Assembly (NCBI GenBank): GCA_026770705.1
Contig: JANJGN010000052.1
Span: 1,922,001-1,986,000 of the forward strand
DNA: 64,000 bases
Reading direction: 5' to 3'
Origin: Isurus oxyrinchus
Taxonomy: Eukaryota
This document shows positions 7,821-62,354 of the stretch, piece after piece. Positions within the stretch are counted from its first letter, which is position 1, and every line of letters begins with the position of its first letter. A model generated the notes under the pieces. That model was given only the letters and a program-made list of their open reading frames with translations. It was not told the DNA's origin and made no database searches. Made by a program: the position numbers and the translations under genes.

Positions 7821-8069
7821 TCAGTTTTTCTTGAACCTGATCTGTGCGTATTCCGTGTCCTCGCTCCTGTGCACAGTCCTGTCACCGCTGGGCAGCTTTG
7901 AAAAGTTGATGTTGGCGTAGAGAAGCTCGTCGGGTTTGTCTGAGTTCCCATGTCCAACATCGCCTCCCACTGGACCTTCAGAGAGACCCCAGGAAGCTGG
8001 GGTCTCCCCCTCGCTAGTTGTGTCTCTGGTTGTGTTCCGGGGCTCAGTAATCAGCACGTTCTGTTCATC
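7821..8069 (-). CDS. Gene A distal terminal exon with ITIM (LLYANI) and ITSM-like motif (TEYAQI)
   Basis: Acceptor tttctctgtag, phase 0; DEQNVLITEPR...DELLYANINF...DTEYAQIRFKKN*. Confidence 0.8.
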   Translation of the reverse strand, partial: DEQNVLITEPRNTTRDTTSEGETPASWGLSEGPVGGDVGHGNSDKPDELLYANINFSKLPSGDRTVHRSEDTEYAQIRFKKN

Positions 8070-10600
8070 CTACAGAGAAATGGAAACAGAAGACATCCTC
8101 ACATCAATTACTGGTACTGATAGGGTTAAATTATTGTGCAGACTTGTTTAATTCTCTCTCTCCTATCGGATAAAAGGCACCACCTATGGCAGTGCAGCAC
8201 CCCCTCAGTACTGACCCTCTGTCAGTGCAGCACTCCCTCAGTACTGACCCTCCAACAGTGCAGCACTCCCTCAGTGCTGACCCTCCGACAATACAGTGCT
8301 CCCTCAGTACTGACCCTCTGTCAGTGCAGCACTCCCTCAGTACTGACCCTCCGACAGTGCAGCACTCCTTCAGTACTGACCCACTGTCAGTCCCGCACTC
8401 CCTCGGTAATGGCTCTGGTGAGTGACGGCTTGGATTCTGCACTCAGGTGCCTGGTGTGAGGCTCAATAACATGAACCTTGTAATCAGAGAGAGGATGAGA
8501 GAGAGAGATAGAGGAGGGATAGAGACAGAGTGTTATTAATCTAATAATGTTTGTATTATAAATGCAAACTGTCTTTTTAAACAGAGGTTTAGTCTGTGTG
8601 TGTGCCTGTGTGTATTTTAATTGGATTAAAGCCAGCCAGTCTGTGTGCTTTGATGTATAGTAGTTTTGAGATGTAAACAAAGAGGTAAAGTGGTAATTTG
8701 CATTTTTAAATAAAACTTTCAAAGTCTGAGAGTGAAATCTTAAACCAATCAACGTTTATATTACTAATAAAATTGATACGATGAAAGGGGATTTATTATT
8801 GGAAGAGATGGAGTTCAAAGGTCCTGATGATACATTGCGAATTTACCTTCAAACAGAAGCCATAAGACCATAAGACATAGGATGAGAAATTAGACCATTC
8901 GGTCCATCGAGTCTGCTCCACCATTCATACATGGCTGATATGTTTCACAAACCCAATTCTCCAACCTTCTCTCCTAACCTTTGATCCCCTGACCAATCAA
9001 GAGCCCATCAATCTCCATCTTCTTCACACTCAAGAGCTGGGTATAACTTGAGCAGTTTTGTGTGTGCAGAGCAGAGGCTTGTAACAGCAAAGCAGCTGTA
9101 ATCCTACACCTGTCTGCAAAGGAACCAAAGTGAAAGGAACCTCATTTGGAATTTGTGAGGTGAAAATGCTTTGCCTGGTGTCTGCTTAAAGTCTATGGGT
9201 TGTCTTAGAGGAGATTAGTTTGAGAATTTGTTATAAAGTTATGATAATACTAGTTTGTAGCCATGTGCATATGTTTAACTTGTGAAAATTAATAAATGTC
9301 TCATTTAGATTGATATAAAATCATCTTGAGAACTGGTGGTCTTATTCCTGAATTTAGAGCTGCATCTCAAACATTTCACTGGGAAATATAGGTTACGACA
9401 ACTGTTTAAAGTTTCCCTCTGGGATTTTAAACAACAGCCTTTACCAGTTGCTGTGTATTAACAGAGAGACAGCATGATACTGAACCATTGCTGACTCCAC
9501 AGGTACAAATCAGTGGGTAACTGGGCTGGGAATCTGGGACATGTGTTGTCTACACACTGAGATAGAAGCTTTGGAGTGAGTGTAAACAGCTCCTGTACCT
9601 GGTGTTTCACAGAGAGTGGACTGGGGGTCAATGCAATGTCACTGGTCCCTGAAACTCTCTCCTCCGTCACTGTCTTTCTCCTGCAATAATAAAATATCAC
9701 ACTGTGGTTATCATATAGCAGAGAGTCAGGGCAGCACAGACACAGAGCCCACTGTAACCTTACACCAATGACTGGACTCTCTCTTTAAATCACCTCTGCA
9801 CAAAGCACAGAATCAAGACGCTCGACACCATCCAGGACAAAGCAGCCCGACTGATCCACACCCCATCCACCACATTAAACATTCACTCCCTCCACCATGA
9901 ACACACAGTGGCAGCAGTGTGTGTACCATCTACAAGATGCACTGCAGCAACTCAGCAAGGCTCCTTCAACAGCACCTTCCAAATACGCGACCTCTACCAT
10001 CTAGAAGGACAAGGACAGCAGACACATGGGAACACCACCACCTGGAAGTTCCCCTCCAAGTCACTCACCATCCTGACTTGGAAATATATCACCGTTCCTT
10101 CACTGTCGCTGGGTCAAAATCCTGGAATTCCCTCTCTAACAGCACTGTGGGTGTACCTACACCACATGCACTGCAGCGGGTCAAGAAGGCAGCTCACCAC
10201 CACCTTCTCAAGGGCAGTTAGAGATTGGCATCAATGCGGACATCACCAGTGACAGCCACATTCGATGAAAGAATTAAAAATCTCACAGCTCAATGTATTT
10301 ATTGTGAGCCTGCTGCACACACGCCCTGTCAAAGGAACCTCTGTGGTTCCATTGTTAATCGAAGCAGATCAGAGTTACTGCAACAACTTGCATTTATGCA
10401 GCACCTTCAATGTAGCAAAATGTCCCAAGGCTCATCCGGGGCTTGTTAGTGACATCTTCACCTGACTCTGAGGCACATGAGGAGATATTAGGGACAGGAG
10501 ACCAACAGCTGAGTCAACAAAGTCAGTCATTAACGGTCATCTTAAAGGAGGAGCTGGAGATAGAGAATGAGAGACTGACACAGAAAGAAAGAGAGAGACA

Positions 10601-10639
<39 letters not shown>

Positions 10640-13600
10640 TGAATCTCACTCCCCAATGGCTCAGCATCCAGTCCTCTCTGGAGAAGCATTTCATTCCAAA
10701 CCACACCAACCGCAGCCCAATTCCATCCCTTCCTCCCTCTCTCCCCCTGTCCCCCAGTGGGTTGTTTCCTGTTCCCAGGAATCTCAATCCCTACCCGCAC
10801 ACCCACATCTCCTCACTCCCACTCCCCATTTCTCATTCAGTTATGCTCAAACCTGATCTGTGCGTATTCCGTCTCCTCTTCCCTGTGGACAGACCCATCA
10901 CCACTGGACACCCTCAAAACTTGGGGATTGGCGTAGAGAAACTCTTCAGGTTTGCCGGGGTTCCCAAGTCCAGCATCGCCTCCCACTGGACCTTCAGAGA
11001 GACCCCGGGGAGCTGGGGTCTCCCCCTCACTAGTTGTGTCTCTGGTTGTGTTCCGGGGCTCAGTAATCAGCACGTTCTGTTTACCCTACAGAGAAATGGA
11101 AACAGAAGGCATCCTCACATCATTTACTGGCACTGATAGGGTTAAATTATTGTGCAGCTTCGTTAATGTCAGTCGTGTCTCAGTGGGTTTAACTCTCTCT
11201 CCCATGTCTTATGAAAGAAACCACCTATGGCATTGCAGTGCTCCCTCAGGACTGACCCTCCAACAGTGCAACACATCCTCAATAGTGACCCTCTGTCAGT
11301 CTCGCACTCCCTCAGTACTGACCCTCTGTCAGTCTCGCACTCCCTCAGTACTGACCCTCCGACAGCGCAGCAAAAACCTCAGTACTGACCCTCTGACAGT
11401 GCAGCGCTCCCTCAGTACTGACCCTCCGATGGTGCAGCGCTCCCTCAGTACTGACCCTCCGATAGTGCAGCGCTTCCTCAGTACTGACCCTCCGACAGTG
11501 CCGCGCTTCCTCAGTACTGACCCTCCGACAGTACAGCGCTTCCTCAGTACTGACCCTCCGACGGTGCAGCACTCCCTCAGTACTGACCCTCCGACTGTGC
11601 AGCACTCCCTCAGTACTGACCCGCTGTCAGTCTCGCACTCCCTCGGTAATGGCTCTGGTGAGTGACGGCTTGGATTCTTCACTCAAGTGTCTGGTGTGAA
11701 GCTCATTAACATGAACCTTGTAATCAGAGAGAGGATGAGAGAGAGAGAAAGAGAGAGAGAAAGAAAGGGAGGTTGAGATAGAGAGAGAGACTGGAATTTG
11801 TGAGGTGAAAATGCCTGGAATCTGCTTAAAGACTATGGGTTGTCTTAGAGGAGATTAGTTTGAGAATTTGTTAAAAAGTTATGATAATACTAGTTTGTAA
11901 CCACGTGCATATGTTTAACTTGTGTAAATTAATAAATGTCTCATGTAGTTTGATATAAAACCATCTCGAGAACTTGTGGTATTATTCCTGAATTAAGAGA
12001 TGCATCTCAAACATTCCACTGGGAAATATAGGTTATGACAGTTGTTTAAAGTTTCCTTCTGGAATTTTAAACAACAGCCTTTACCAGTTGCTGTGTCATA
12101 ACAGAGAGACAGCATGATACTGAACCATTGCTGACTCCACAGGTAAAAATCAGTGGGTAACTGGGCTGGGAATCTGGGACACGTGTTGTCTACACACTGA
12201 GATTGAAGCTTTGGAGTGAGTGTAAACAGCTCCTGTACCTGGTGTTTCACAGAGAGTGGACTGGGGGTCAATGCAATGTCTCTGGTCCCTGAAACTCTCT
12301 CCTCCATCGCTGTCTTTCTCCTGCAATAACACAATATCACACTGTGGTTATCATATAGCAGAGAGTCAGTGCAGCACAGACACAGAGCACACTGTAACCT
12401 TACACCAACGAATGGGACTGTCTCTTTAAATCACTTCTGCACAAAGCACAGAATCAAGAAGCTTGACACCATCCAGGACAAAGCAGCCCGATTGATCGAC
12501 ACCCCATCCCCCACATTAAACATTCACTCCCTCCACCATGAACACACAGTGGCAGCAGTGTGTGTACCATCTACAAGATGCACTGCAGCAACTCAGCAAG
12601 GCTCCTTCAACAGCACCTTCCAAACCCACGACCTCTACCATCTAGAAGGACAAGGGCAGCAGACACATGGGAACACCACCACCTGGAAGTTCCCCTCCAA
12701 GTCACTCACCATCCTGACTTGGAAATATATCACCGTTCCTTCACTGTCGCTGGGTCAAAATCCTGGAACTCCCTCTCTAACAGCACTGTGGGTGTACCTA
12801 CACCACATGGACTGCAGCGGGTCAAGAAGGAAGCTCACCACCTCATTCTCAAGGGGCAATTAGAGATGGGCAATTAGTATTGTCCACGCCAGTGACAGCC
12901 ACATTTGATGAAAGAATTTAAAATCTCACAGCTCAGGAGGAAGCCACTCAGCCCATCGTGCCTGTGCTGGCCCTTTGTAAAAACTGTCCAATTAGTCCTA
13001 AGCAAATGTTTATATTAAAATCAAGTTAAATCTTCAGACTTACTTTCTCACACAGATGAAGATGAAGATTCCAGCCAGGAAAACACTCAACATGATCCCA
13101 GCCGTGAACAATCCTACTGTCCATTTACTGGAATCTCTACCTGTAAAAACAGTCATTAATTACTGCACTACAGGTTTACAATGATGCTCCGATGTATCTC
13201 GAGAAGCGATACACTCACTCAGTGTTTAAATACTCATTCTCGGGCAATGCTGACATTTATTGTCCATCCCTAGTTTCCCCTTGAGAAGGTGGTGGGGGGT
13301 CTTCCTCCTGAACCACTGGTTTGTCCCAAACTGAGAGACCAGTTCAGAGGGCACGTAAGAGTTAACCATGTTGGTGTTTGAGACTGGAGTCACATATACA
13401 CCCAGACCTGTTAAAATGGACAGGTTTCCCTCACTAAATGTGTAATTATATCTTTAATTTCTATATTTATGTATCAATTAACATCACTAAAATAATCATT
13501 TATCACCTCAATTTCACACTGTTGTTTGTGGGATCTTGCTCTGCACAAATCAGCTGTTGCGTTTCTCAACGTAATCTATGTAACATTTATATATAATATT

Positions 13601-16600
13601 TATCGATGTAATCTATGTAACATTTACATATAATTTTTCTCAATGTAATCTATGTAACATTTATATATAATGTTTCTCGATGTAATCTATGTAATATTTA
13701 TATATAATATTTAGTCGTTTGGGAGGAGAACCTGAGTATTGCTGAGAAAGGACATTTTGTCAAAGCTTTCTGTCTTGCACCCAATGAAGCAGCTTATCTG
13801 GGGGAGAGGGTTCCAGATTTCCACTCCCCTTAGTCTGAAGAAGTGCTTCCTGACATCACCCCCTGAACGGTCTGGCTCCAATTTGACCAAGTGTTGCCAT
13901 TGTCACATGAGGTCAGGTGATTCAAAGCTTGGTCAAAGGGGTAAGTTGTACACAGCATCTTAGAGGAGGTAGAGAGAGAGGTGGAGAGGTTGAGGGAGGG
14001 AATTCTCGAGTTTAGGGATCAATCCAGCTGAGTGGAGATCGATCCTAAGCGAGTCTCTCACCTTTGACCCACAGATACATCTTGAACATGGCTTCCCCGT
14101 GTGGGTTTTGAACCGAGCAGGATGCAATCACTCCCCCCTCATCCTGGGGTCTCATCAGGGTGAGGGAACCAGTCACCAGATGCCCATCTCTGACCTGCCA
14201 CGACACAAAACCTCCGTGTGTTTGGTTACCACTGATGTTGGCACTGGGCAGGTGCCAGGTGAGGTCTCCGGGTGGGTTGGAGTTGGCCACACAGATGCAG
14301 GTGACCCCCTCTGACCTCCGAGTGCACTCTGACTGCTGGGAAATCTCCGGCTTATCTGAGGAGGGAAGGACAACAATGAGACAACTTCATAGCAAAGTTA
14401 GAGCGTAAGATAGAATCTTCACACTGAAACACTCATTCCTGCCTTTGTTACCTCCGTACTCGACTATCCCAACACTCTCCTGCCCGACCTCTCATCTTCC
14501 ACTCTCCGGAAACATCAGCTCATCCCAAACTCTGCTGTCCCCATGTCCTAACTCACACCGAGTCCCGTTCAGACATCACTCCCTGTTGGTCACTGAGCTA
14601 CACTGGCTCCCGGTCCGACAATGCCACAATTTTAAAATTATCATCGTTTCAAATCCCTCCTTACTCCCTCCCTATCTCTGTAACCTCCTCAAGCCCCTAC
14701 AACCCTCCCTATCTCTGTAACCTCCTCCAGACCCTACAACCCTCCCTATCTCTGTAACCTCCTCCAGACCCCACAACCCTCCCTATCTCTGTTACCTCCT
14801 GCAGCATCTACAACCCTCCCTATCTCTGTTACCTCCTCCAGCCCCTATAACCCTCCCTATCTCTGTTACCTCCTCCAGCCATCACAACCCTCCCTATCTC
14901 TGTAACCTCCTCCAGACCCCACAACCCTCCCTATCTCTGTAACCTCCTCCAGCATCTACATCCCTCCGAGGTCTCTGCGTTCCTCCAATTCCGGCCTCTT
15001 GACCATCCCCCGATTCCTATCGCTCCACCATTGGCAGCCGTGCCTTCAGCTGCCTGGGCCCCGAGCTCTGGAATTCCCACCGTAAACCTCTCCATTTCTA
15101 TCTCTCTCCTCATTTCAGACACTCCTTAAAATCCGGCCTCTTTCTCTGAGCTTTCAGTCCCTGTTCTAATATCTCCTTATGTATCTCGGAGAGGCGCAGG
15201 GTGAAAAAAGCAGGGAGGTGATGCTAGTTATGCTAAACCACAGCAAGGAAGCTGCCCTCAGACAGAAAGTGTTTGAGTTTTAAGCAGAGACAGGGGGAGT
15301 AAAATGCTTACATTGTACGTTCAGGTGGGTGATGTTGGAGGTGCTGTTACCCACTGGGTTCCTCGCTGTGCAGTAGAAACCTGCATCATTCTCCCGTGTT
15401 ACAGGAGTGAAGGAGAGAGTGCGGCTACTTGTGTTTAACTGGGTGCTGGTGTTCCCCTCGATCCTGAACCAGGTGTAATGAGATATCGGTGGGACACTTT
15501 CACTGGAGCAGGTTAATGTGATATTGCTTCCCTCCCTTATCCCACCTGAGGATCTGCTGATGGACACCATCGTCTCCTGTGGGGGATCTGGAACAAAGAC
15601 AGAGAACAATCAGCAGGTAATCCCCACACCCCACAGCTCTCCGAAATCTCTGTGCTCCTCCAATTCCGACCCCTTGCACATTCTCCCATTCCCATCTCTC
15701 CACCATTGGCGGCCGTGCCTTCAGCTGCCTGGACCCTAACCTCTGGAATTCCCTCCATCATTTCTCACCTCCTTCGGACAAAATCTGACCCCGAGTCACA
15801 TTAGGAGATATTAGGAGAGGTGAGCAAAAGCTCGCTGAAAGCAGGAGGTTTTAATGGTGTGTCTTAATGGTTTTAAGGAGCATCTTAATGGTTGAGAAAG
15901 AGTTGGAGATTGTGTATCTCCCGCGCATCCCCCCTTGCAAATTCCTCTCCCTCCCAGAGCAATGTAAGGGTCCCTCCTGTCTTCACTTTTCACCCCACCA
16001 GCCTCCTCATTCAAAGGATCATTCTCCGCCATTTCCGCCAACTTCAGCATGATGCCACCACCAAACACATCTTCCCTTCACCACATCCGCCCCCCCCCCC
16101 ACCCCCCCCCACGTTGGCATTCCATAGGGATCATTCCCTCCAGGACACCCTGGTCCACTCCTCCATCACCCCTAGCATCTCAACCCTCTCCGATGACATC
16201 TTCCCATGCATTTGCAGAAGGTGCAACACCTGCCCCTTTACTTCCTCCCCCCTCACTGTCCAATGACCCAAACACTCCTTCCAGGTGAAGCAGCGCTTCA
16301 TGCAGACTTCCTTCAATATAATCTACTGCCTTCACTGCTCCCAATGTGGTCTCCTCTACATGGGACAGACCAAACACAGACTGGGTGATCGCTCTGATGA
16401 ACACCTTCGGTCTGTCCACAAGCATGACCCAGACCTCCCTGTCGCTTGCCATTTTAACCCTCCACCCTGCTCTCATGCCCAAATGTCCGTCCTTGGTCTG
16501 CTGCATTGTTCCAGTGAAGCCCAACACAAACTGGAGGAACAGCACCTCATCTTCCGACCTGGCACTTTACAGCCTTCCGGTCTGAATATTGAGTTCAACA

Positions 16601-19600
16601 ATTTCAGATCATGAACTCTCTCCTCGATCTTCACTGCTTTTTGAACCCTTTTTTTATGTATTCATTTTAATTGTTTTATTTGTTGACTGTTTTCCACTTA
16701 TTTTTATTATTATTATTTGAAATTCATTTCCATTTTTATTGATTGTTTTATCCACAGATTTTAGTCTATTTTCGATCTTTATTCCCTCCACCGTCCCCTC
16801 CCCCTGCCACACCCCCACGAGGGCCATCTGTCTCTTTCCAGAGTGCTTACCCTGGTCCGCCCATTATCACACTCTGCTTAATGTCACCATTAGCACCTCC
16901 TTTATCCAATACCACCACTGTTAACAACCCTTTGACCTTTTGTTTATGACATCTTCCACAATCTCTCCATTGCCTCCACCTATCGCTGGTTTTCTATCCA
17001 GCTCCACCTGTCCCATCGCCCCCCCCTTAGACAGGATATATTTCACCACATGTCTACTTCCCTTTAGCTCTGAAGAGGAGTCTTACGGACTCCAAACGCT
17101 AACCCTGTCTTTCTCTCCACAGATGCTGCCAGATGCTCAGAATCAGCTGGATGGACAGAAAGACCAATGAGTGACTTAGATCAAGAGGAGACGTTCAGCA
17201 ATTAAAAGGGTTGTTCAGGACAGTTAGAGAGAGAAAGGTCATCAAGTACGGAGATTGGAAACGAAGACCTGACAGCCTTGTCCTCACAACCATTGAAGGA
17301 GAAACTGAGAGCAAAAACAGAAAGGGAGAGGAAAAATTGGGTGTGTGGATAACGTGGACTGAGCGAGGATTGAAGAAAACTGGATTAAAAACAACACGAT
17401 CCCAATGGCTCCACGGAGACCACGGAGACAACAAACAAACAAATGTATCTCCACACTCACATTCCACAGTGATGGTTATGAACCCCTCCACTGCTCCATG
17501 TTCATTCCCTGCCACACACTGATAGTCTCCAGTGTCCCTGGATGTAACGTGAGGAATCACCAACCACAGCTCATTGTTGGAACTTGTTCTGTTCATTGGG
17601 ACATTAAGATGTCGCCACGTCAGGTTAGAAGCTGGGAAGCTCTCGACAGAGCAGATTATCACTGCAGAATTCCCCTCAATTATGTTGATCGATGAAGCGT
17701 TAATCATACCAAGAGAAGTAATTGATAGGTTCCGTGGTGCATCTAAATACAAATAAAGGTTTCATTGTGAGCAAACACAGTGCACAGCAAGACTCCAGGT
17801 ATCATCTCTCTCCATCTGGTGTCTATGTGCATGTCAAGGCTTCTTTCTCCATTATAATTTTCTCTGTCACCATTTGTAACATTCACTGCCAGTGTGTTCC
17901 TTTTTGCATATTCATGGGAAGTGGATGTATCTATCTAGACCAGCATTTATTACCCATTCCTTATTGCCCTTGAGGAGGTGGTGGTGAGTTTTTCACCTCC
18001 AGAGGATTCCCAGCCTCTGACCGGCTCCTGTAGCCACAGTATTTATGGCCGGTCCAGTTAGTTGTTTGGTTAACATCCCCCAGGATGTGGATTGTGGGGG
18101 ATTCAGCGATGGGAAAGTGATTGAATATCAAGGAGAGATGGTTAGATTCTCTCTTGTTGGAGATGATCACTGCCTGGTGCTTGTGTGGTGTGAACATTAC
18201 TTGTCATTTCTCAGCCCAAGCTGAGTGTTGCTCAGCTCTTGCTGCATGTGGATATGTAAACTGTCACGCTGTAATTACAGCCTTCCACCAGAGGAGACAC
18301 TGTTGGGCTAGAAGAAAAGAAAGTGTCTTTCACATGATCAGGATGTTCACGGAGATTTCACCATGGAGGAATTGCTTTGGAATAATGGGGTATTGGGTGA
18401 TAAACCTACAATTCACTGTTCAGGAGGTTGCTCCATCCAATTCAGTGTCTTGATGATCTGGAGTTTACCTTCCTTCAACACAGAATCAGAGCTGCTACCG
18501 AGACTCGAGTGCAGCACTGAGACANNNNNNNNNNNNNNNNNNNNNNNNNNNNNNNNNNNNNNNNNNNNNNNNNNNNNNNNNNNNNNNNNNNNNNNNNNNN
18601 NNNNNNNNNNNNNNNNNNNNNNNNNNNNNNNNNNNNNNNNNNNNNNNNNNNNNNNNNNNNNNTAACTCACGTTCCACAGTGATGGTTATGAACCCCTCCA
18701 CTGCTCCATGTTCATTCTCTGCCACACACAGATAGTCTCCAGTGTCCCTGAATGTAACGTGAGGAATCACCAACCACAGCTCATTGTTGGAACTTGTTCT
18801 GTTCATTGGGACATTAAGATGTTGCCACGTCAGGTTAGAAGCTGGGAAGCTCTCGACAGAGCAGATTATCACTGCAGAATTCCCCTCAATTATATTGATC
18901 GATGAAGCGTTAATCATATCAAGAGAAGTAAATGAGAGATTCTGTGGAGCATCTAAGAACAAATCAAGTGTTTAATGTGAGCAAGCACTGTGCACAGCAA
19001 GACTCCATGCATCATGTCTCTGTATCTGATGCCTGTGTGCATTTCTAGGCACCTTCCCTCAAGATATTTTCCTATGTCACATTTACAATGGGCACTGCCT
19101 ATGTAAACTGTCACACTGCAGGAGCATTCTCCCACCAGAGACCCTGCCCATCCAGATTTAAAGAAACAGCCTTTCACATCCTCAGGATGTCCCCAAGGGC
19201 TTGACAGGCAATGAATTGTATTTGATCGATGGAGCACTGAGGGGTAAATCTACAATTCTCTGTTAAGGATTTTGCTCATCCAATTCAGGGTCTTGTTGAT
19301 CTGGAGTTTACCTTCCTTCAGCACAGAATCGGAGCTGACACCGAGACTCCAGTGCAGCACTGANNNNNNNNNNNNNNNNNNNNNNNNNNNNNNNNNNNNN
19401 NNNNNNNNNNNNNNNNNNNNNNNNNNNNNNNNNNNNNNNNNNNNNNNNNNNNNNNNNNNNNNNNNNNNNNNNNNNNNNNNNNNNNNNNNNNNNNNNNNNN
19501 NNNNNNNNNNNNNNNNNNNNNNNNNNNNNNNNNNNNNNNNNNNNNNNNNNNNNNNNNNNNNNNNNNNNNNNNNNNNNNNNNNNNNNNNNNNNNNNNNNNN

Positions 19601-37000: not shown

Positions 37001-37138
37001 TGCCTCTCTGATACGAAGGTGATTCTAACCAGGACACTGACCAGTTTGATTACAACTTAACACAACATCACACGTTATTTGTCCGCACTGACTGACCAGA
37101 TTGTTGCTTTACAAAGCTTCAAACAGTCTGTCGACTTC

Positions 37139-37258
37139 CTTTCACTGTTTGTCTCTCCCAGACACAGACTCCAGTGATAGTGATAACCACAGCCACAAGG
37201 AATATCACAGCTCGTATTCCCAGGATCAGGATCACATGCAGAATCTCTCCTCCACTGT
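37139..37258 (-). pseudogene. Gene B transmembrane exon with intramembrane Arg
   Basis: ttctctag acceptor; SGGEILHVILILGIRAVIFLVAVVITITGVCVWERQTVK; donor reads gaagtc, not gtaagt. Confidence 0.8.
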
Positions 37259-43605: not shown

Positions 43606-43606
43606 A

Positions 43607-44936: not shown

Positions 44937-45053
44937 TTATAAATTCCCATAAACAGAATCCTTGGCAAATTCACAGTTTGCGTAAAGATCATCATCTGTA
45001 TCAGGATTGACTCCGCGGTTAGATTTCATTTCCAGATCCTTCTCATCTTTCTT
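44937..45053 (-). CDS. Terminal cytoplasmic exon, third type (gene C locus)
   Basis: Acceptor tttctattacag, phase 0; KKDEKDLEMKSNRGVNPDTDDDLYANCEFAKDSVYGNL*. Confidence 0.75.
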   Translation of the reverse strand, partial: KKDEKDLEMKSNRGVNPDTDDDLYANCEFAKDSVYGNL

Positions 45054-45590: not shown

Positions 45591-45695
45591 CTGATTCCTC
45601 AAAGCCCAACCACGCTCACAGTTTTCATAAACAGGACCTCGATATTCATCAACACGGTGGTTCGATTTGATTCCTGCTTTCCCCTCGCCTCTCTT
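45591..45695 (-). CDS. Putative internal cytoplasmic exon with VYENC motif
   Basis: Acceptor ctctattacag like the terminal exon; KRGEGKAGIKSNHRVDEYRGPVYENCE..; candidate donors after 45620 and 45591. Confidence 0.55.
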
Positions 45696-46044: not shown

Positions 46045-46340
46045 AAGATGTTCTGTACAACAGACTTGAGTCTCACACCCAGATCTCAATAATCAGTAGA
46101 AATCTTTCAAAGGCATCAATCATTGGAATCTGTCTTTATAAAGTCACAACATCAACAAAGGACGGTGTTGGTGGTGGAAATGAATTCCAATCGTTCCATT
46201 ACTTACCCAGGACCTGTCCGACTGCTTGCCTGGGGAGGAACTGCCCATACGCTCTGCTTGGGCTGAATGACCTCTTCCTGTGCTGCTCCCTCTGTGTATT
46301 TAATGAGAAAGGGTTGATGTGTCTCTGTGAGTCAAATCAG
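46045..46340 (-). other. Orphan copy of the first-exon/promoter block inside gene C
   Basis: Near-identical to 34140-34430; donor at 46207; PU.1 site missing. Confidence 0.75.
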
Positions 46341-47103: not shown

Positions 47104-50100
47104 TTTCTCACACACTTGAAGATGAAGAATCCACTCAGTCCAACACTCAAACAGATTCCAGCTCCAAGCAATCCTGCTTTCCATTCATTGGAATCTCGCC
47201 CTGTAAAATCAGCCAATGAATGACTCCGGTACAGTTTGAGAATGGTTCCCTATGTACATGTAGTAATTCTGAACTTGTGAAGTGATATTGTCTATGCATG
47301 AAAGGTCTATACAAATAAATTTATCTATGTAATATTTATTGATAATATCCATGTACATGCAGGTTTCTATAAGGAGGATTCACATATAACAGAGGTGCCA
47401 AGCTGCTGAGGTGACACACAGGATTACAAAAATTCCAAACAGCGGAAACAACATGCTATAGACAGAGCAAAGCGATCCCACAACCAACGATTCAGATCTA
47501 AGCTCTGCAGTCCTGCCACATCCAGTCATGAATGGTGATGGACAATTAAAGATCTAACAGGAGGAGGATGTTCCACAAATATCCCCATCCTTAATGATGG
47601 GGGAGCTCAGCACATCAGTGCAAACGACAAGGCTGAAGCATTGGCAACCATGTTCAGCCAGAAGTGCTGAGTGGATGATCCATCTCGGCCTCCTCCAGAG
47701 GGTCCCAGCATCACAGATGTCAGCTTTCAGACAATTCGATTGACTCCACGTGACATCAGCAATCAGCTGATGATACTGGATACAGCAAAGGCTCTTGGTC
47801 CTGGCAACATCCCGGCAACAGGAAATAATGTGGCTACAAGAGCGGGTCAGAGGCTGGGAACTCTGTGGTGAGTAATTCAACTCCTGACCACCCAAAGCCT
47901 GTCCACCATCGGACAAGGCACAAGTCAGGAGTGTGATGGAATAATCTCCAATTGCCTGAATAAGTGCAGCTCCAACAACACTCAAGAAGCTCGACACCGT
48001 CCAGGAGCAGCTTGTTTGATCGACAGCCCATCCACCAGCATAAACATTCATACCCTCCACCACTGGCACACAATGGCAGCAGTGTGTGCACCATCTACAA
48101 GATGCACTGCAGCAACTCACCAAGGCTCCTTCGACAGCACCTTCCAAACTCTTAACCTCTTCCACTGAGACAGTTCCAAGTCAGTGAGGTGTGTGATTTG
48201 GAAGCGAACTTGAGGTGTTGGTGTGCCCTGGGACTTGGAACTATATCGGACGTTCCTTCACCATCACTGGGACAAAATCCTGGAACTCCCTCCCTAACAG
48301 CACTGTGGGTGTGCGTACACCACATGGACTGCAGTGGTTAAAGAAGGCAGCTCACCACCACCTTCTCAAGGGGCAGTTACAGATGCGCAATAATTTCTGG
48401 TCTTATCAACAATGCCCACATCCCATGAGCTAATAACAAGAGAACGTTCAATTCTGTGTAACTCACGTTCCACAGTGATGTTATAAATCCCTCCACTGCT
48501 CCATGTTCATTCTCTGCCACACACTGATAGTCTCCAGTGTCCCTGGATGTAACGTGAGGAATCACCAACCACAGCTCATTGTTGGAACTTGTTCTGTTCA
48601 TTGGGACATTAAGATGTCGCCACGTCAGGTTAGAAGCTGGGAAGCTCTCGACAGAGCAGATTATCACTGCAGAATTCCCCTCAATTATATTGATCGATGA
48701 AGCGTTAATCATACCAAGAGAAGTAATTGAGAGATTCTGTGGTTTGTCTGAAAACAAATAAAGATCAGTTACTTACATTGACTGTGAAACACTTTGAGAG
48801 ACACTGAGAATGTGAAAGGTGTGATATCAATGTAGGTTCCTTCACCACAAAGCACTTAATTCAGGCAGACACTTCAGTTCAGTACTGAGGGAGTGCTGTA
48901 CTGTTGGAGGGTCAGTACTGATGGAGTGCTGCACTGTTGGAGGGTCAGTACTGAGGGAGAGCTGCCCCCTTGGAGCGTGAGTACTGATGACCTGCTGCAC
49001 CGTTGGAGGGCGGTTACTGTGAAGTCTGGACTGCCGCATAGTCAGTATTGAGCAAGTACTTCACTGTCAGAGAATAGTACTGAGGGAGTGCTGAACTGTT
49101 GGAGGATCAGTACTGAGGGAGTGCTGCACTGTCGGAGGATCAGTACTGATGGACTGGTGCACTGTCGGAGGATCAGTACTGAGGGAGTGCTGCACTGTCG
49201 GAGGGTAAGTACTGATGGAGTGGTGCACTGTCAGAGGGTCAGTACTGAGGGAGTGGTGAACTGTCGGAGGGTCAGTACTGAGGGATTGCTGCACTGTTGG
49301 AGGGTCAGTACTAGAGGAGTGTTGCACTGTTGGAGGGCCAGTACTGAGGGAGTGCTGCACTTTCGGAGGGTCAGTAATTAGGGAGCTCTGCACTGTTGGA
49401 GGGTCAGTACTGAGGGAGTGCCGCAGTGTCGGAGGGTCAGTACTGAGGGAGTGCTGCACTGTCGGAGGGTTAGTACTGAGGGAGTGCTGCACTGTCGGAG
49501 CGTCAGTAATTAAGGAGCTCTGCACTGTTGGAGGGTGATAAGGCCATAAGACCACAAGACGTCAGAGCAGAAGGAGGCCATTCGGCCAGTCAACTCTGCT
49601 CCGCCATTCAATGATACCATGTCTGATCTGACAATCCTCAACTCCACTTTCCTGCCTTTTCCCCATAGCCTTTGATTCCCTGACTGATTAAAAAACTGTG
49701 TATCTCAGCCTTGAATATAATTAATGACCCAGCCTCTGCAGCTCTCTGTAGTAAAGAATTCCACACATTCACTACCCTCTGAGAGAAGAAACTCCTCATC
49801 TCTGTCTTAAATGGGTGACCCCTTACTCTGAGATTATGCCCTCTGGTCCTAGACTCTCCCACAAGGGGAAACAACCTCTCAGCATCTACCCTGTCAAGCA
49901 CCCTAAGAATCTTATATGTTTCAATAAGGTCAGCTCTCATTCTCCTAAACTCCAATGAGTACAGGCCCATCCTACTCAACCTCTCCTCATATGAAAATCC
50001 CTCCATTACTGGGATCAACCTAGTGAACCTTCTCTGGACTGCCTCCAATACCAGTACATCTTTCCTTAGATAAGGGAACCAAAACTGCGCACAGTATTCT

Positions 50101-53100: not shown

Positions 53101-56100
53101 CTGCACTGTCGGAGGGTCAGTACTGAGGGAGTGCTGACTGTCAGAGGGTCAGTACTGAGGGAGTGTTGCACTGTCATAGGGTCAGTAATGAGGGAGTGCT
53201 GCACTGTCATAGGGTCAGTACTGAAGGAGTGCTGCACTGTCAGAGGGTCAGTACCGAATGAGTGCTGCACTGTCATGGGGTGAGGACATTGCGATTCCTG
53301 CTCTGCTCTATCGGTCTCTTGGCTGGAAATAAAAGCCGCTGTGTTACTGTTCAGAAACTGTTATTAATTGTGTTCTGGTCACTATTTTCCCTAAAAAACA
53401 GATTATCTGATTCTCATCAGAATACCTTTCTATGGGATCCTGCTGTGCATTATCTACACTGTTCTAGCTAATGTACAATGAAAGGTCGTCCGTACTTACC
53501 TTGCACAGTGAGTACGAGGGTCCGCTCCGATGAAACAGATGGATATCTCACTCTGCAGCTGAGAGTGTGTCCGTGGTGTTTGAGTGATGGGATCAGGGTC
53601 AGAACAGAAGTATAGGTCAGAGTGACACCATGCTGAGTTACAGTGTTTGAGACTGATCCAGGTACGTCAGTGGGAGTGTCCCAGGTTAAGACAGGTGCTG
53701 CTGTTCCATTACACGTTGTGTTGAAGGTGCAGCTTACATCCACACGCTTTCCTGCAATAATTTCAGCAGGGAATATCGTGGGTTTATCTGTGAAATCTAA
53801 CAGACAGAGAATGGATCCTTTTAGAGAAATATAACGTGAAGCATCAGTTCAAATAGAAACCACAGTCCCACAAGAGAAAGCACTTTTACAAGGATGATAT
53901 CAGAACTGAGAGGTTACAATGATCAGGAAAGATTTTCTTGCTCTTTGGCAGTAGTGTTTCTGTCTCTCAGCTTAATACACGTTCACTCCGAGACATGTGA
54001 ATTGAGAACACTGGATGAGAGAAGAGGCTCAGACCAGAGATTGGAGTTAAAAGCAGAATACTGTGGATGCTGGAAATCTGAAACCAAAACAAAAATTGCT
54101 GGAAAGACTCAGCAGGTCTGACAGTATCAGTGGAGAGGAAGATAGGGTTAACGTTTCGAGTCCGTATGACTCTTCATCAGACCAGAGGTTTGAGTTCACT
54201 GGCTTCTCATTTCCTCAGTGATCTGGGTGATTTATTACATTGTGGTTTGTTGGATCTTGCTGTGCACAAACTGACTGCTGTGTTTTACATCTGTGACTAC
54301 AATTCAGGAATAATTTCATTGGCTGTGAAGGGATTTGGATCCTCCTGAGGTGGTAAATTGCGCTGCAGAAATGCACATCTTTCTTTTATCGATACGTCAG
54401 CCTTTTAAACAGGACAGGAGAGATTGATGGGAGTGGATAACCTGATAATACAGTTAATGTTTTTAATCATTGATATTAAAGTGAGTATTAGAGGTTGCTT
54501 TAGGACTGAACCGGAAGCTATCACCAGGTTATTGAGAATCAGACAGTGTGTTATAATAAGCTGTGTTTTGTGTTAATATGTAAATGTCAAAGTTTGTGTT
54601 ATTTCTCATTGAGTGTTGAATGTGAATTGTTGAGTAATTATAACACAGCACTTACCAGAAATGTGAAGCTGGGTTACAGGGTAATAGTTATGGCTCGGAC
54701 CATTGTCAAATTCTATCCTGAAAAAATAAGGTCCTGCATCTTCCCGTCTGATGCTGTTTATAATCAGGGAACAGTCGCCATCTTTCAGGTCTCCAGACAG
54801 CCGGGTCCGATGGTGGAACCGTGGTAACTCGTGACTGTGATCCTTGGAGTGAAAGGCAATGGGAGCCCAGGGAATCTGTTTCTCATTATTAAACCAGACT
54901 CCACCTCGCGGTTTGCTTTCCAAATGTGATGGATAACTGTAATGACATGGAATCTGTACACACGAACCTTCCTGCGCTGTCACCTCTCGGGGACTGTCAC
55001 CTTTCCACTCTTGTGACAGTCCAACTGGGGAGAGAAATATCAATATTTAACTCTGGAAGGTTTGTAGATCCACTAGACTCGATATCCACCCCCTCCATCA
55101 CTGGGGCACAGTGGCTGCAGTTTGGAACATCTACAGGACACACAAGGAACTCCCCAAGGTTTCACAATGGATGGAAGAGAATCCTGGACACAGGAGTGGA
55201 CAAGTTCATTCTACTTTGGCTCATGGTCCTCAGGACCCTGTTTAGTGAAGCCAGTGAGACAGTGTCACTGTGCCTTGTATTATAATGCTCCTGTGTAGCC
55301 CCTTGGATTGTTTTTTTTTACAGTTAAGGCGCTATGTAAATATAATCTATTGCTCTCTGCTCATCTGGACCATTTGGATTGTTAATTTCAAGCGGCCTGG
55401 TGACTGCTTCATGTTCAGTCCAAATGCAGCCTCTAATTATCACTTTAATGTCAATGATTAAATGTGACCCAACACACTGTCTACAAGACACACCAACTGA
55501 GATCCATTCAGTGCTGATTTACAAGACAGGACAATGGATTAGGAGCCGTCAGAACTCCCCCCATTATCACCGTCATGAATCACTAATTAGCCTAACATTC
55601 CTGTCTGCTCTTCAACACAGCTGATTGGCTAATCTGATTCAATCTGATTGGTGCACTTTGGACCTTCATTGTCTGAGGAATCTCTTTGGATCCTCATTGT
55701 TTTAGGAATATCTTTGGATCCTCATTGTTTAAGGAATCTCTTTGGATCCTCATTGTCTAAGGGATTATTTCTGATCCAAACCCCATATTGTTGTATTGTT
55801 GATTCCGATGCAGCATTGTAGACTGACTTGTCCCCAAGCTCAGCACTGACCCTACTCCAGCAGACACTGTGAAACACACTAACAAAGTGCCTCTAGCCTG
55901 AGCTCTGCATGTGTCGAGAGAAAGACAAATATACAAACTGAATATTGACACCTTTACACACAGACAGCTTTACCTTCCTTCTCTCTTTCAGTTATCTTGC
56001 TCCCTTATTGAAGTATCTAGCAAGGTGAGAATGGACAGGAAGTGTGACACTGAACAGCCTGTCTATTCTAGGAGCTGCTGTGTTGTCTTCATGGGAAATT

Positions 56101-56599
56101 CTGAATAAAATCAGCAAAAGACACATTTCAGGATATTGCTATCAGACACCTAACATAGGGAGAGACTTCATCCTCCAGTTTTTATCCCTGATTTTCTACT
56201 CAACCTTTTACCACCCTTCCCCCCATCCACACTGACTTACATAGGCTCCCAGTCAAGCAGATCCTCCATTTTAAGATTCTCATGCTCAATTCCCAATCCC
56301 GCCAACCCCCTCTCCACTCGCTGGCTCTGTAACCTCAACCAGCCCCTTCAACCCTCTGAGATCTCTGCTCTCCTCCAATTCTGCTGTCAGACAGGGAGTC
56401 AGTGTATATCAGTGAGCACAGTGGTGATGGGTCAATGGGACTTGGTGTGTGTTTGTACACTGGCTCACTGCTGAATCTGTTCTCAATCACAGCTCAATAA
56501 GAATGATCTTTTACAAAGACTATTAGCCATAAATCTGTTTGAGCTGATGATGATATTACCTTGGAGAAGTGACAGGAGGAAGTAAGATTTCCCGATCAT
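47104..56599 (-). CDS. Gene C: Siglec-like leader-V-C2-C2-(TM); 1-nt deletion predicts a soluble 346-aa product or a pseudogene
   Basis: Leader 56560-56599; V 54656-55024 (YFFRIE); C2 53500-53796; C2 48467-48747 (281 nt versus 282); TM exon 47104-47200 (in-frame reading WKAGLLGAGICLSVGLSGFFIFKCVR). Confidence 0.75.
47450..48425 (+). mobile_element. Internally deleted LINE fragments
   Basis: LDTAKALGPGNIPA; CTIYKMHCSNS; WNSLPNSTV. Confidence 0.8.
48878..49535 (+). repeat. 33-bp minisatellite array
   Basis: About 19 units. Confidence 0.9.
49545..52590 (-). mobile_element. Long degenerate CR1 LINE ORF2 (APE endonuclease + RT)
   Basis: LNAHSI..DLIAIMETWL; KSPGPD; KSCMTNLLEFFE..VDVIYLDFQK; YKALVRPHLEYC. 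Confidence 0.92.
52590..53282 (+). repeat. 33-bp minisatellite array
   Basis: About 20 units. Confidence 0.9.
54145..54183 (-). ncRNA. Minimal hammerhead ribozyme motif (identical core to 40049-40087)
   Basis: GGT-CTGATGA-A-GAGTC-ATACG-GACTC-GAAA-CGTTA-ACC. Confidence 0.7.
55655..55762. repeat. 28-bp tandem repeat (about 4 copies)
   Basis: TTTGGATCCTCATTGTTTAAGGAATCTC. Confidence 0.85.
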
Positions 56600-59945: not shown

Positions 59946-60027
59946 GTGGTTGCTGTCAAAGTATGAAAGCAAACTGTTAACCCTTGGAGTGCCAAGGCTG
60001 TGTCCGAATGTGACTAACCCTTTTCCC

Positions 60028-61160
60028 ATGTAACAGGCTCGAGGGGCTGAATGGCCTCCTCCTGTTCCTGTGTAATGGGATTGAGGGGGCTGAATGGGCC
60101 CCTCATGTTTATGTGTAACAGGCTCAAGGGGTTGAACGGCCTCCTCCTTTTCTTTTCTTACAAGCTCGAGAGGCTGAATTGGCCTCCTCCTGTTCCTGTG
60201 TCATAGGCTCGATGGGCTGAATGGGCCTCCTCCTGTTCCTGTGTCACAGGCTCGATGGGCTGAATGGGCCTCCTCCTGTTCCTGTGTCACAGGCTCGATG
60301 GGCTGAATGGGCCTCCTCCTGTTCCTGTGTCACAGGCTTGAGGGGGCTGAATGGGCCTCTTCCTGTTCCTGTGTTACAGGCTCACGGGGGCTGAATGGGC
60401 CTCCTCCTGTTACTGTGTAACAGGCTCAAGGGGCTGAATGGGCCTCCTCCTGTTCCTGTGTAACAGGCTCGAAGGGGCTGAGTGGGCCTCCTCCTGTTCC
60501 TGTGTAACAGGCTCGAGGGGGCTGAGTGGGCCTCCTCCTGTTGCTGTGTAACAGGCTCAAGGGGCTGAATGGGCCTCCTCCTGTTCCTGTGTAACAGGCT
60601 CAAAGGGCTGAATGGCCTCCTCCTTTCTTCTGTGTAACAGACTCGAGGCGGCTGAATGGGCCTCCTCCTGTTCCTGTGTAACAGGCTCAAGGGGCTGAAT
60701 GGGCCTCCTCCTTTCTTCTGTGTAACAGACTCGATCGGCTGAATGGGCCTCCTCCTGTTCCTGTGTAACAGGCTCCAGGGGGCTGAATGGCCCTCCTCCT
60801 GTTACTGTGTAACAGGCTCAAGGGGCTGAATGGGCCTCCTCCTGTTCCTGTGTAACAGGCTCGAGGGGCTGAATGGGCCTCCTCCTTTCTTCTGTGTAAC
60901 AGACTCGAGGCGGCTGAATGGGCCTCCTCCTGTTCCTGTGTAACAGGCTCAAGGGGCTGAATGGGCCTCCTCCTGTTGCTGTGTAACAGGCTCCAGGGGC
61001 TGAATGGGCCTCCTCCTGTTCCTGTGTAACAGGCTTGAGGGGCTGAATGGGCCTCCTCCTGTTCCTGTGTAACAGGCTCGAGGAGCTGAATGGGCCTCCT
61101 CCTGTTCCTGTGTAACAGGTTCAAGGGGCTGAATGGGCCTCCTCCTTTCTTCTGTGTAAA
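60028..61160 (+). repeat. 43-44-bp CR1-tail-like minisatellite
   Basis: Same unit as 42370-43605. Confidence 0.92.
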
Positions 61161-62237
61161 TGGCCAGTCCAAAGGATGTGTTTGATGCTGGGGTTAATGG
61201 CCTCCAACACAATCCTGTCCTCACATGATTAACTTAGTTAGTGACTGGTTACTGGTTAATGCAGGAGGATTATTTATTTTCCCAATCTTTTATCCATGTG
61301 TCTGGTTAGGATCTTTTCATCAAACACAGAGCAGAACCAGGATCGAGGATGTTGGTGTCTGAAATCTGTAACACATCGCACCGTCCACCCATTCACTCAG
61401 CCTTCAGGATGGAGGCTAATTGTTCTTTCAAAAACTGAAAGACTGAAATGGTTGTAAGTTGTAGCTTTAGCTCATTCTGTTGTCAAAGCTGTTTCAGCCA
61501 TCCAGGATACAGTGAAAAACGTACATTTGCAAGCAACTTTTCACATCATAGCTCCCTCTGTTCACAATGACATTGGCAACATCAATGTAAACATGTCACG
61601 CTGTAATGACATCCTCCCACCAGTGCTGGCACCGTAGCACACCTGTTTTCCTCTGTGTTGTCGGAAGTCTACCAATTCCCCAATCAAATTGTTTCCCTTT
61701 CCCAGGCTGCGATTAGTCTAATATTAAACAATAACTCATAAAATACACATGTTCTCTGAACATATGTTTGACTGCAAAATGGTGAATAAATTATAGGGAT
61801 TTGCTCTGGTCCAATTATCCACCGATCCTGCATTTCCTGAAGTCTACACTGGCTGATGAATATTCTGTAAACACTGGCAGACAGGAAGGTGAATAACAGA
61901 ATGAAAATTAACTCTTAATCACGGACACGGGATTGAATTTGTCCGTTCTGTCCTGGTACATCATCGAACGATATCAAAAGACATTTACAATCAGATTGGA
62001 GAGAAGGATGTTTCCAACAGGGAGGGACAATTCTGAAGGAGGATGTTCAAATTGAAACCCACAGACAATCATCCTGGATAGATCATTCCAAAGAAATTCC
62101 ATCAGATTGTAACAAGAGGTTTAAATCTATTTCCTGGGAGTGAGTTCCTGTGGATATTAGGAAGGTAAATTGGAGTTTTGAATGATTCTCCCGTTCTGTA
62201 TTCTCCCCACACTGTGTGTGTCTCATTCTTGCTCAGT

Positions 62238-62354
62238 TTATAAATTCCCATAAACAGAATCCTTGGCAAAAGTACAGTTTGCGTAAAGATCATCATCTGT
62301 ATCAGGATTGACTCCGCGGTTAGATTTCATTTCCAGAACCTTTTCATCTTTCTT
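62238..62354 (-). CDS. Terminal cytoplasmic exon of a probable gene D upstream of the window
   Basis: KKDEKVLEMKSNRGVNPDTDDDLYANCTFAKDSVYGNL*; paralogous to 44937-45053 with shared 3' UTR. Confidence 0.75.
   Translation of the reverse strand, partial: KKDEKVLEMKSNRGVNPDTDDDLYANCTFAKDSVYGNL

What the first reader, a model, noticed from the sequence alone, without database searches (positions are those of the whole stretch)
7821..62354. Modular paired-receptor Siglec cluster in a probable cartilaginous fish: one ectodomain, up to five outputs
Seen: three genes share near-identical leader, V framework and C2 exons but attach to different signalling ends. These are (1) neutral TM + ITIM/ITSM, (2) the same TM + ITSM only, (3) an Arg-containing TM + short tail, (4) a DLYANC-x7-YGNL tail (two copies), and (5) a predicted soluble form. 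Established: mammalian Siglec-5/14 and Siglec-11/16 are inhibitory/activating pairs homogenised by gene conversion against sialic-acid-mimicking pathogens. Inference: this is an independently expanded paired-Siglec system with mix-and-match tails. I do not know of such a system described in sharks, but cannot search the literature.
Basis: partly seen in the sequence, partly recalled or inferred. Interest (0 to 1): 0.9.

Follow-up and report, generated by a model that had tools for sequence, protein, structure and literature searches.

The report
Shark Siglec-type receptor gene cluster
This shark DNA holds three neighbouring Siglec-type immune-receptor genes with almost the same outer framework but different signalling ends; the pattern is real and predicted by automatic annotation in many sharks and rays, but here the "activating" copy looks broken and I found no paper describing the family.

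Summary
There are three leader exons, four V-set exons, three C2a exons and four C2b exons (one a half). There are two neutral TM exons, one Arg-TM terminal exon, two ITIM/ITSM cassettes and two DLYANC..YGNL exons.

They form three genes:
- **Gene C (33.8 to 7.8 kb):** apparently intact and inhibitory, with two V heads. The outer head has lost the sialic-acid Arg.
- **Gene A (56.6 to 44.9 kb):** ends in a tyrosine-rich YxN tail built from four exons.
- **Gene B (41.7 to 37.1 kb):** carries the Arg-TM exon, but its V exon has an in-frame TGA.

The two ITIM/ITSM "outputs" are tandem cassettes of one gene, and great white shark models join them into one tail. The "soluble form" rests on a 1-base deletion. 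The V exons are mosaics: near-identical frameworks around a hypervariable loop segment.

The closest relatives are Gnomon predictions from lamniform and other sharks and rays, which carry all three tail types. The first two domains group with amniote CD33-related Siglecs on thin sampling. I found no paper on this. The scan has reported the same family elsewhere in this genome.

Verdict: a real, undescribed variant of a known kind. The paired-receptor reading is only partly supported here.

The parts
56560..56599 (-). Gene A leader exon (MIGKSYFLLSLLQ + 1 nt), GTAAT donor
54656..55024 (-). Gene A V-set exon. Siglec-type with FFRIEF Arg present. Loop type 1.
53500..53796 (-). Gene A C2a exon (C-x5-C Siglec domain-2 pattern), intact
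48467..48747 (-). Gene A C2b exon: 281 nt instead of 282. The 1-nt deletion shifts the frame before the donor.
   Evidence: Some RNA contigs carry the extra base (table 4, place 48479).
47104..47200 (-). Gene A neutral TM exon (RDSNEWKAGLLGAGICLSVGLSGFFIFKCVRK), ends in phase 2
   Evidence: 96.7-96.9% to Carcharodon P0016 and P0253. Its donor is used in the RNA joints.
46207..46291 (-). Gene A middle cytoplasmic exon (GSSTGRGHSAQAERMGSSSPGKQSDRSW); restores phase 0
   Evidence: RNA joint 46207>45695.
45591..45695 (-). 105 nt, KRGEGKAGIKSNHRVDEYRGPVYENCERGWALRNQ, a third YxN tyrosine.
   Evidence: RNA joints at both ends. Translation. 97% to P0253 and 89% to P0228.
44937..45053 (-). Gene A terminal exon, KKDEKDLEMKSNRGVNPDTDDDLYANCEFAKDSVYGNL + stop
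   Evidence: RNA joint 45591>45053.
41638..41677 (-). Gene B leader exon
40560..40934 (-). Gene B V-set exon with in-frame TGA at 40917-40915. The Arg is kept. The divergent loop (type 2) has no close match in relatives.
39404..39700 (-). Gene B C2a exon, intact
38928..39078 (-). Gene B C2b remnant: 3' half only, no acceptor or first Cys
37119..37258 (-). Arg-TM terminal exon (SGGEILHVILILGIRAVIFLVAVVITITGVCVWERQTVKGSRQTV + stop)
   Evidence: 73-83% to the tails of P0089, P0175, P0006 and P0022
33811..33850 (-). Gene C leader exon
28152..28529 (-). Gene C outer V-set exon (V1). FFTIKF: the essential Arg is replaced by Thr. Loop type 3.
24592..24960 (-). Gene C inner V-set exon (V2). Arg present. 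Loop type 1 as in gene A.
23483..23779 (-). Gene C C2a exon
18671..18952 (-). Gene C C2b exon copy 1. Its donor lies 8 nt before the assembly gap 18525-18662.
17461..17742 (-). Gene C C2b exon copy 2
15312..15587 (-). Gene C C2c exon
14062..14355 (-). Gene C C2d exon
13044..13140 (-). Gene C neutral TM exon
12239..12320 (-). Gene C cytoplasmic exon 1, cassette a
10837..11085 (-). Gene C tail exon, cassette a. FLYANP (not an ITIM) + TEYAQI + stop. Possible internal donor AG|GTTTGA before the stop.
   Evidence: P0162 and P0200 join it onward.
9599..9680 (-). Gene C cytoplasmic exon 1, cassette b
7821..8069 (-). Gene C tail exon, cassette b. LLYANI (ITIM) + TEYAQI (ITSM-like) + stop.
62238..62354 (-). 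Second DLYANC..YGNL terminal exon. No ectodomain exons of its gene lie in the window.
34301..34385 (-). Copy of the middle exon about 450 bp 5' of leader C. Similar copies at 57135-57051, 59893-59809 and about 42209-42125. Probably 5'UTR exon 1 of each gene.
   Evidence: The N-terminus of P0162 and the read-through models P0230 and P0254.

Best explanation
The window is a slice of a large, tandemly duplicated Siglec-type receptor cluster of a lamniform-like shark. It holds three genes built from interchangeable phase-1 Ig exons.

- **Gene C** is an apparently intact inhibitory receptor. Its exon order is leader, two V-set heads (the outer one without the sialic-acid Arg), C2a, two or more C2b, C2c, C2d, a neutral TM, then two tandem cytoplasmic cassettes. 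Used singly, the first cassette gives an ITSM-only tail. Read through an internal donor, as in the great white shark model P0162, the two cassettes give one long tail with ITSM + ITIM + ITSM. By analogy with CD33-related Siglecs it would recruit SHP-type phosphatases (inferred).
- **Gene A** shares the inner head's ligand-loop type. It ends in a neutral TM plus a four-exon tail with three YxN tyrosines (VYENC, LYANC, VYGNL). This tail is most likely a Grb2-type adaptor docking site, not an ITAM (inferred).
- **Gene B** carries a conserved Arg-TM exon of the kind that pairs with DAP12-like adaptors (inferred). It is a pseudogene or null allele as assembled.

The V exons keep near-identical frameworks around a strongly diverged C-C'-D loop segment. 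This points to diversification of ligand specificity on a shared scaffold.
For: Shown:
- Exon maps with canonical splice sites and matching phases.
- Siglec identity of the V exon, with the Arg aligned.
- Domain-2 similarity to MAG and CD33.
- Mosaic identity profile of the V exons.
- TGA in the V exon of gene B, and the 1-nt deletion in the C2b exon of gene A.
- GT..AG joints in spliced contigs at exactly the predicted TM_A, middle, X and terminal exon borders.
- Predicted shark proteins with the same architectures. P0228, P0194 and P0253 have TM, middle exon, exon X and the DLYANC exon. P0162 and P0200 have concatenated cassettes. P0182 and P0002 have two V heads. P0017 has two C2b, then C2c and C2d. 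P0006, P0022, P0089 and P0175 have the Arg-TM.
- Loop type 1 occurs with both ITSM and YxN tails in relatives.
- The tree places the first two domains with amniote CD33-related Siglecs, apart from MAG/CD22-like rows.
Against: - No ligand binding or signalling was tested.
- The RNA contigs are 90-99% like the window and come from one sample, so they may stem from a paralogue or another species.
- The best-supported joint skips the middle exon and would end the frame inside exon X.
- The TGA and the 1-nt deletion were not checked against reads of the sequenced individual.
- The number of C2b exons is uncertain because of the gaps.
- Concatenation of the two cassettes rests on Gnomon models of another species and on a weak donor (GTTTGA).
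- The tree has few reference Siglecs and several open forks.
Confidence: 0.7

Rival explanations
1. All three genes work, and this is a true activating/inhibitory/adaptor trio. On this reading the TGA in gene B and the 1-base deletion in gene A are assembly errors or null alleles that segregate in the population, as with human SIGLEC14 and SIGLEC16.
For: - The Arg-TM exon, C2a exon and leader of gene B are intact, and the Arg-TM exon is 73-83% identical to intact proteins of other sharks.
- Relatives join the Arg-TM exon straight to C2a, so the half C2b need not matter (P0089, P0175).
- Some RNA contigs carry the base missing from gene A's C2b (table 4).
- The assembly has gaps nearby.
Against: - The TGA sits in otherwise well-aligned sequence.
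- The probable DNA run X19 shows no inserted base at 48479.
- Gene B's loop segment has no close counterpart among 261 relatives (51% at best), as expected for a drifting copy.
Confidence: 0.2
2. The paralogues are partly assembly artefacts. Haplotypes or collapsed repeats would be laid side by side, above all the two C2b exons around the gaps and the duplicated tail cassettes.
For: - Three N runs lie between 18.5 and 19.8 kb.
- The C2b units repeat with a period of about 1.2 kb at about 90% identity.
- Satellites are common in the introns.
Against: - The copies differ by 6-20% and have different flanks, loop segments and repeat insertions.
- Tandem C2b, tandem V and tandem cassettes are all seen in independent assemblies of other sharks (P0017, P0022, P0182, P0162).
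Confidence: 0.07
3. The genes have the Siglec fold, but the family does not act as sialic-acid lectins. On this reading it recognises other ligands, for example proteins, as PILR or CD33-like decoys do. The different tails would then simply reflect a general leukocyte-receptor cluster.
For: - One of four V exons has lost the Arg.
- The loop segment is hypervariable.
- No binding data exist.
Against: - The canonical Arg, the A-strand aromatic residue and the Siglec cysteine pattern are kept in three of the four V exons here (the A-strand aromatic codon is the TGA in gene B). The FxR motif with the Arg is kept in most of the top relatives listed.
Confidence: 0.15

Closest known systems
Human paired Siglecs (Siglec-5/14, Siglec-11/16)
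   Same: Adjacent genes have similar Ig ectodomains, one with ITIM/ITIM-like tail motifs and one with a positively charged TM and almost no tail. Null or pseudogene alleles of the activating partner are known in humans (from my own knowledge).
   Different: - Here the Arg-TM gene's ligand loop differs strongly from the inhibitory gene's, and its V exon is interrupted.
- The copy that shares the inhibitory gene's loop type carries a YxN tail instead.
- Gene conversion is not shown.
CD33-related Siglecs in general
   Same: - V-set domain with FFR(I/V)E, a domain 2 with the C-x5-C pattern, and a proximal ITIM plus a distal TEYxxI motif.
- The first two domains group with amniote CD33-related rows in the tree.
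   Different: - The host is an elasmobranch.
- There are up to six or more Ig exons, including domains most like CD22 d6-d7, CEA and MAG d3-d4.
- Synteny with the mammalian 19q13.4 cluster is untested. Reviews treat the CD33-related group as a rapidly evolving, mainly mammalian set (PMC9008986, PMC9630641).
Human Siglec-12 (Siglec-XII)
   Same: Two tandem V-set domains, with a head that has lost the essential Arg (the human part is from my own knowledge). In gene C the outer head reads FFTIKF.
   Different: In the shark relatives P0182 and P0002 the outer head keeps the Arg, so the loss is specific to this copy. Up to seven V exons are reported elsewhere in this genome (earlier finding s1-865389, which I did not check).
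CD22 and Siglec-10/G cytoplasmic YxN (Grb2-type) sites
   Same: Tyrosines in a YxN context within a Siglec tail (the mammalian part is from my own knowledge).
   Different: The shark tail has only YxN tyrosines (three), no ITIM, ITAM-like Y-to-Y spacing of 11 residues, and its own set of exons. It is conserved in sharks and rays: 17 of 111 collected relatives.

Membership tests
Siglec (I-type sialic-acid lectins) | N-terminal V-set Ig domain with the conserved F-strand arginine | tested here: met
   FFRIEF is present in three of four V exons and aligns to the Siglec-5 FFRVE motif. The outer V of gene C has Thr instead.
Siglec (I-type sialic-acid lectins) | Siglec cysteine pattern: two Cys in the B-strand region, one in the E strand, and an extra Cys in domain 2 | tested here: met
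   GSCVQIPC and DCSL are in every V exon. VSCTFNTTCNGT..LSCRV is in C2a. This is at sequence level only; no structure was made.
Siglec (I-type sialic-acid lectins) | Sialic-acid-dependent ligand binding | not testable with these tools
   Needs recombinant protein and glycan arrays.
CD33-related Siglec subgroup | Membrane-proximal ITIM plus membrane-distal ITIM-like/ITSM motif | tested here: met
   LLYANI and TEYAQI are in exon 8069-7821. The other cassette has FLYANP, which is not an ITIM, plus TEYAQI.
CD33-related Siglec subgroup | Phylogenetic grouping with CD33-related Siglecs rather than MAG, CD22, sialoadhesin or Siglec-15 | tested here: inconclusive
   The d1-d2 tree groups the elasmobranch family with elephant, rodent, sengi and turtle CD33-type rows, apart from MAG/CD22-like rows (89/98). 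It contains no Siglec-15, sialoadhesin or human reference, and has open forks.
Paired activating/inhibitory receptors (Siglec-5/14 type) | Near-identical ligand-binding domain on both partners | tested here: not met
   For the Arg-TM gene B, V-exon amino-acid identity to the other copies is 75-78%, and the loop segment is 49-64% identical at nucleotide level. Gene A and the inner V of gene C are about 90% identical in V and 93% over the first two domains, but gene A is not an Arg-TM form.
Paired activating/inhibitory receptors (Siglec-5/14 type) | An intact partner with a charged TM residue that binds an ITAM adaptor | tested here: inconclusive
   The Arg-TM exon is intact and conserved, but the V exon has a TGA. 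Adaptor binding was not tested.
ITAM-bearing receptors | YxxL/I-x6-8-YxxL/I | tested here: not met
   The tail reads YANC-x7-YGNL. The first half ends in Cys here, and in Cys, Trp or Phe in relatives. Only the spacing fits.

The most novel reading that the evidence does not exclude
Elasmobranchs have a CD33-related-type Siglec family that reaches back to, or converged with, the tetrapod one. It works as a three-way system in which the same hypervariable sugar-binding head is wired to an inhibitory ITIM/ITSM tail, to an Arg-TM adaptor anchor, or to a dedicated triple-YxN tail conserved in sharks and rays. The tail cassettes can also be strung together by splicing to tune signal strength.
Probability: 0.35. 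Interest if true: 0.7.

Novelty: new variant of a known kind. Interest (0 to 1): 0.55.

Why it matters
Reviews treat only Siglec-1, CD22, MAG and Siglec-15 as ancient, and the CD33-related group as a fast-evolving, mostly mammalian set (PMC9008986, PMC9630641). A large, modular CD33-type family in sharks would change that picture. It would mean either that this design dates to early jawed vertebrates or that it arose twice.

It would also provide a natural series for testing how ligand loops and signalling tails are recombined. That series holds the same framework with three loop types and three tail kinds, a decayed activating copy, and a head without the Arg.

The YxN tail is a candidate signalling module that I found described in no paper.

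Tried and rejected
- **ITAM reading of DLYANC-x7-YGNL:** rejected, because the first half is not YxxL/I.
- **Direct TM-to-DLYANC splice:** rejected, because it is out of frame and runs into RKMRRIWK-stop.
- **'Soluble form':** the only basis is the 1-nt deletion in C2b exon 48747-48467. I do not count it as an output.
- **Conserved block just 5' of the V exons as the leader:** it has no usable ORF. The real leader exons lie 0.7-5.3 kb upstream.
- **Literature:** searches for Siglec with shark or cartilaginous fish, for CD33-related Siglecs in fish and amphibians, and for DAP12 in cartilaginous fish found no description of this family or of a shark DAP12 partner.
- **dN/dS between copies:** values were 0.35-0.93, from few changes, and gave no sign of positive selection outside the unalignable loop segment. 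The TM row of that table was computed in the wrong frame and should be ignored.
- **Read laying:** only one call was allowed and I spent it on gene A's tail.
- **Joined spliced models:** none was sent to any search tool. Exons were searched one by one by reference, and frames across exons were worked out by phase arithmetic.
- This should have been done by reference.
- **Gaps:** no letters were filled in or looked up.

Full report
**What is in the sequence**

All relevant features lie on the minus strand. A tblastn of the candidate exons against the window, self-blastn and pattern searches give these counts:

| Feature | Count |
|---|---|
| Leader exons | 3 |
| V-set exons | 4 |
| C2a exons | 3 |
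| C2b exons | 3 full, plus one 3' half |
| C2c and C2d exons | 1 each |
| Neutral TM exons | 2 |
| Arg-TM terminal exon | 1 |
| Two-exon ITIM/ITSM cassettes | 2 |
| DLYANC..YGNL terminal exons | 2 |

The Ig exons checked base by base (V, C2a, C2b) have AG acceptors and GT donors in phase 1, so they can be combined freely. The leader is MIGKSYFLLSLLQ followed by a GTAAT donor. It lies 0.7 to 5.3 kb upstream of the first V exon. The conserved 200 bp directly 5' of the V exons is intron.

**The gaps**

The three N runs (18525-18662, 19364-19637, 19669-19846) all fall in introns of gene C, between C2a and the second C2b exon. The C2b exon 18952-18671 ends with its GTGAGT donor 8 nt before the first gap, so no coding frame crosses a gap.

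The flanks repeat as a unit of about 1.2 kb at about 90% identity. That is probably why the assembler broke there. The number of C2b exons is therefore uncertain. Relatives carry one to four (P0162, P0017, P0022). I did not fill or look up any gap letters.

**The three genes**

*Gene C (33850 to 7821).* Its exon order is:
- leader;
- V1, which reads FFTIKF, so the essential Arg is replaced by Thr;
- V2, which reads FFRIEF;
- C2a, then C2b twice, C2c and C2d;
- a neutral TM;
- cassette a: cytoplasmic exon 1a, then tail a with FLYANP and TEYAQI and a stop;
- cassette b: cytoplasmic exon 1b, then tail b with LLYANI and TEYAQI and a stop.

The closest model is the great white shark protein P0162. 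Its two tails are almost letter for letter those of gene C. It leaves tail a just before the stop and continues into the second cassette. The window has the matching AG|GTTTGA at that place, and the phases fit. P0200 does the same.

The two-head layout, with these same two loop types, recurs in Carcharodon P0182 and Cetorhinus P0002. In both, the outer head keeps its Arg.

*Gene A (56599 to 44937).* It has a leader, V, C2a, C2b, a neutral TM and then three more exons.
- The TM exon ends in phase 2. Joined directly to the DLYANC exon it would read RKMRRIWK-stop.
- The frame is restored by an 85-nt middle exon (46291-46207).
- A 105-nt exon (45695-45591) follows. It encodes KRGEGKAGIKSNHRVDEYRGPVYENCERGWALRNQ and is itself an old copy of the terminal exon.

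Contigs of three runs from one sample show GT..AG joints at 46207>45695, 45591>45053 and 47104>45695. The probable DNA run shows none of them. The same exon chain stands in basking shark P0228 and P0194 and in great white P0253. P0252 lacks the 105-nt exon.

The best-supported joint skips the middle exon. That would end the frame inside the 105-nt exon. Because the contigs are only 90-99% like the window, this may come from a paralogue.

Gene A's C2b exon is 281 nt instead of 282. Either it is skipped, as in P0016 and P0219, which join C2a to the TM, or the gene is damaged, or the assembly is wrong. Some RNA contigs have the extra base, and the probable DNA run does not.

*Gene B (41677 to 37119).* It has a leader, a V exon, an intact C2a, half a C2b exon and the Arg-TM terminal exon.
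- The V exon has TGA in place of the TGG for the conserved A-strand Trp.
- The Arg-TM exon is 73-83% identical to the ends of intact predicted proteins of catsharks and bamboo sharks. These join it to C2a or C2b.
- An intact Arg-TM Siglec therefore exists in relatives, but this copy is disabled as assembled.

**What kind of protein**

- The V exon hits solved Siglec-5, -7, -8, MAG, CD33, Siglec-10 and sialoadhesin at E 1e-15 to 3e-12, with the FFR motif aligned. CD22 and Siglec-15 score lower.
- Pfam gives V-set and Ig_CD22 above cut-off.
- C2a is most like nectin-4, MAG domain 2 and CD33 domain 2.
- C2b matches many I-set domains, including MAG domain 4.
- C2c is most like CEA and CD22 d6-d7.
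- A tree of the first two domains puts the elasmobranch family with amniote CD33-type rows and apart from MAG/CD22-like rows (89/98). Sampling is thin and several forks are open.

**Relatives**

A full HMMER scan with the V exon found 258 representatives at E 1e-10 or better.
- The top ones are NCBI Gnomon predictions from Cetorhinus, Carcharodon, Scyliorhinus, Chiloscyllium, Stegostoma and Mustelus.
- A second search added rays, skates, sawfish and sawsharks, under names from Siglec-5 to Siglec-13, CD33-like, MAG-like and CD22-like.
- Among 111 proteins with a C2a match, 17 end in a YxN-YxN tail, 29 in ITIM and/or ITSM tails and 3 in the Arg-TM.
- Identity to lamniform proteins reaches 98% in C2a. 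The window is therefore from a shark close to, but by these numbers not identical with, those species.

**The V-exon mosaic**

Between the four V exons, the segment coding the C-C'-D loops is only 49-64% identical between loop types. The exon parts on either side are 86-98% identical, and the shared intron flanks are 90-96%.

Gene A and the inner head of gene C share one loop type (92%). That type occurs in relatives with an ITSM tail (P0012, P0151) and with the YxN tail (P0228, P0194). This is the best case here for 'one head, two outputs'. It pairs an inhibitory tail with the YxN tail, not with the Arg-TM. Gene B's loop has no close match (51% at best).

**Mechanism (inferred)**

- Gene C should damp signalling through its ITIM and ITSM-like tyrosines.
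- The Arg-TM form should need an Asp-bearing adaptor.
- The YxN tail should dock Grb2-type SH2 domains. It fails the ITAM definition.

None of this was tested.

**Literature and earlier notes**

Four searches found no paper on shark Siglec expansions. The whale shark genome paper only lists Siglecs among Ig families.

The scan has already reported the same family in many other windows of this genome, and hepcidin copies among them. I used those notes as leads only.

**Limits**

- Reads were laid on gene A's tail.

Noticed in passing
57135-57051, 59893-59809, 34385-34301, about 42209-42125: Copies of gene A's 85-nt middle cytoplasmic exon, with intact AG and GTAAGT sites, sit about 450-500 bp 5' of each leader exon, and the leader exon itself has an acceptor (CACAG|TTTGAGAG). 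The N-terminus of great white P0162 starts inside such a copy. Basking shark models P0230 and P0254 read from a TM and middle exon into the next gene's leader. The copies look like 5'UTR first exons, and read-through splicing between neighbouring genes seems to occur.
   Followed up: partly
57415-59720; also 8190-8440, 11224-11656, 34658-35683, 48870-49536, 52587-53281: A 33-bp satellite gives long open frames on both strands (…VSTEGVLHCQR… / …LSTDPLTVQHS…), including two of about 550 aa. It lies in introns and between genes of the cluster, and these ORFs are not genes.
   Followed up: partly
43050-43600 and 60020-61160: A second satellite, with a period of about 44 bp, follows each DLYANC terminal exon. 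It is part of the duplicated block 43830-45164 / 61098-62465 (86.6% identity).
   Followed up: no
49638-52196 (minus), 6079-6546 (minus), 36352-36777 (plus): Reverse-transcriptase-like ORF fragments of LINE-type elements lie inside the long intron between gene A's C2a and C2b exons and elsewhere.
   Followed up: no
1957-4700: A block of GT/GGT-type simple repeats has strong GC skew and gives glycine-, valine- or proline-rich pseudo-ORFs.
   Followed up: no
44000-45126: The three spliced-contig runs cover the whole kilobase 3' of the DLYANC stop, and coverage drops sharply 5' of the exon. This fits a 3'UTR of 1 kb or more. AATAAA/ATTAAA hexamers lie 776 and 944 nt after the stop.
   Followed up: partly
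In mammals HAMP lies beside MAG and CD22 (my own knowledge). I could not read that DNA.
   Followed up: no
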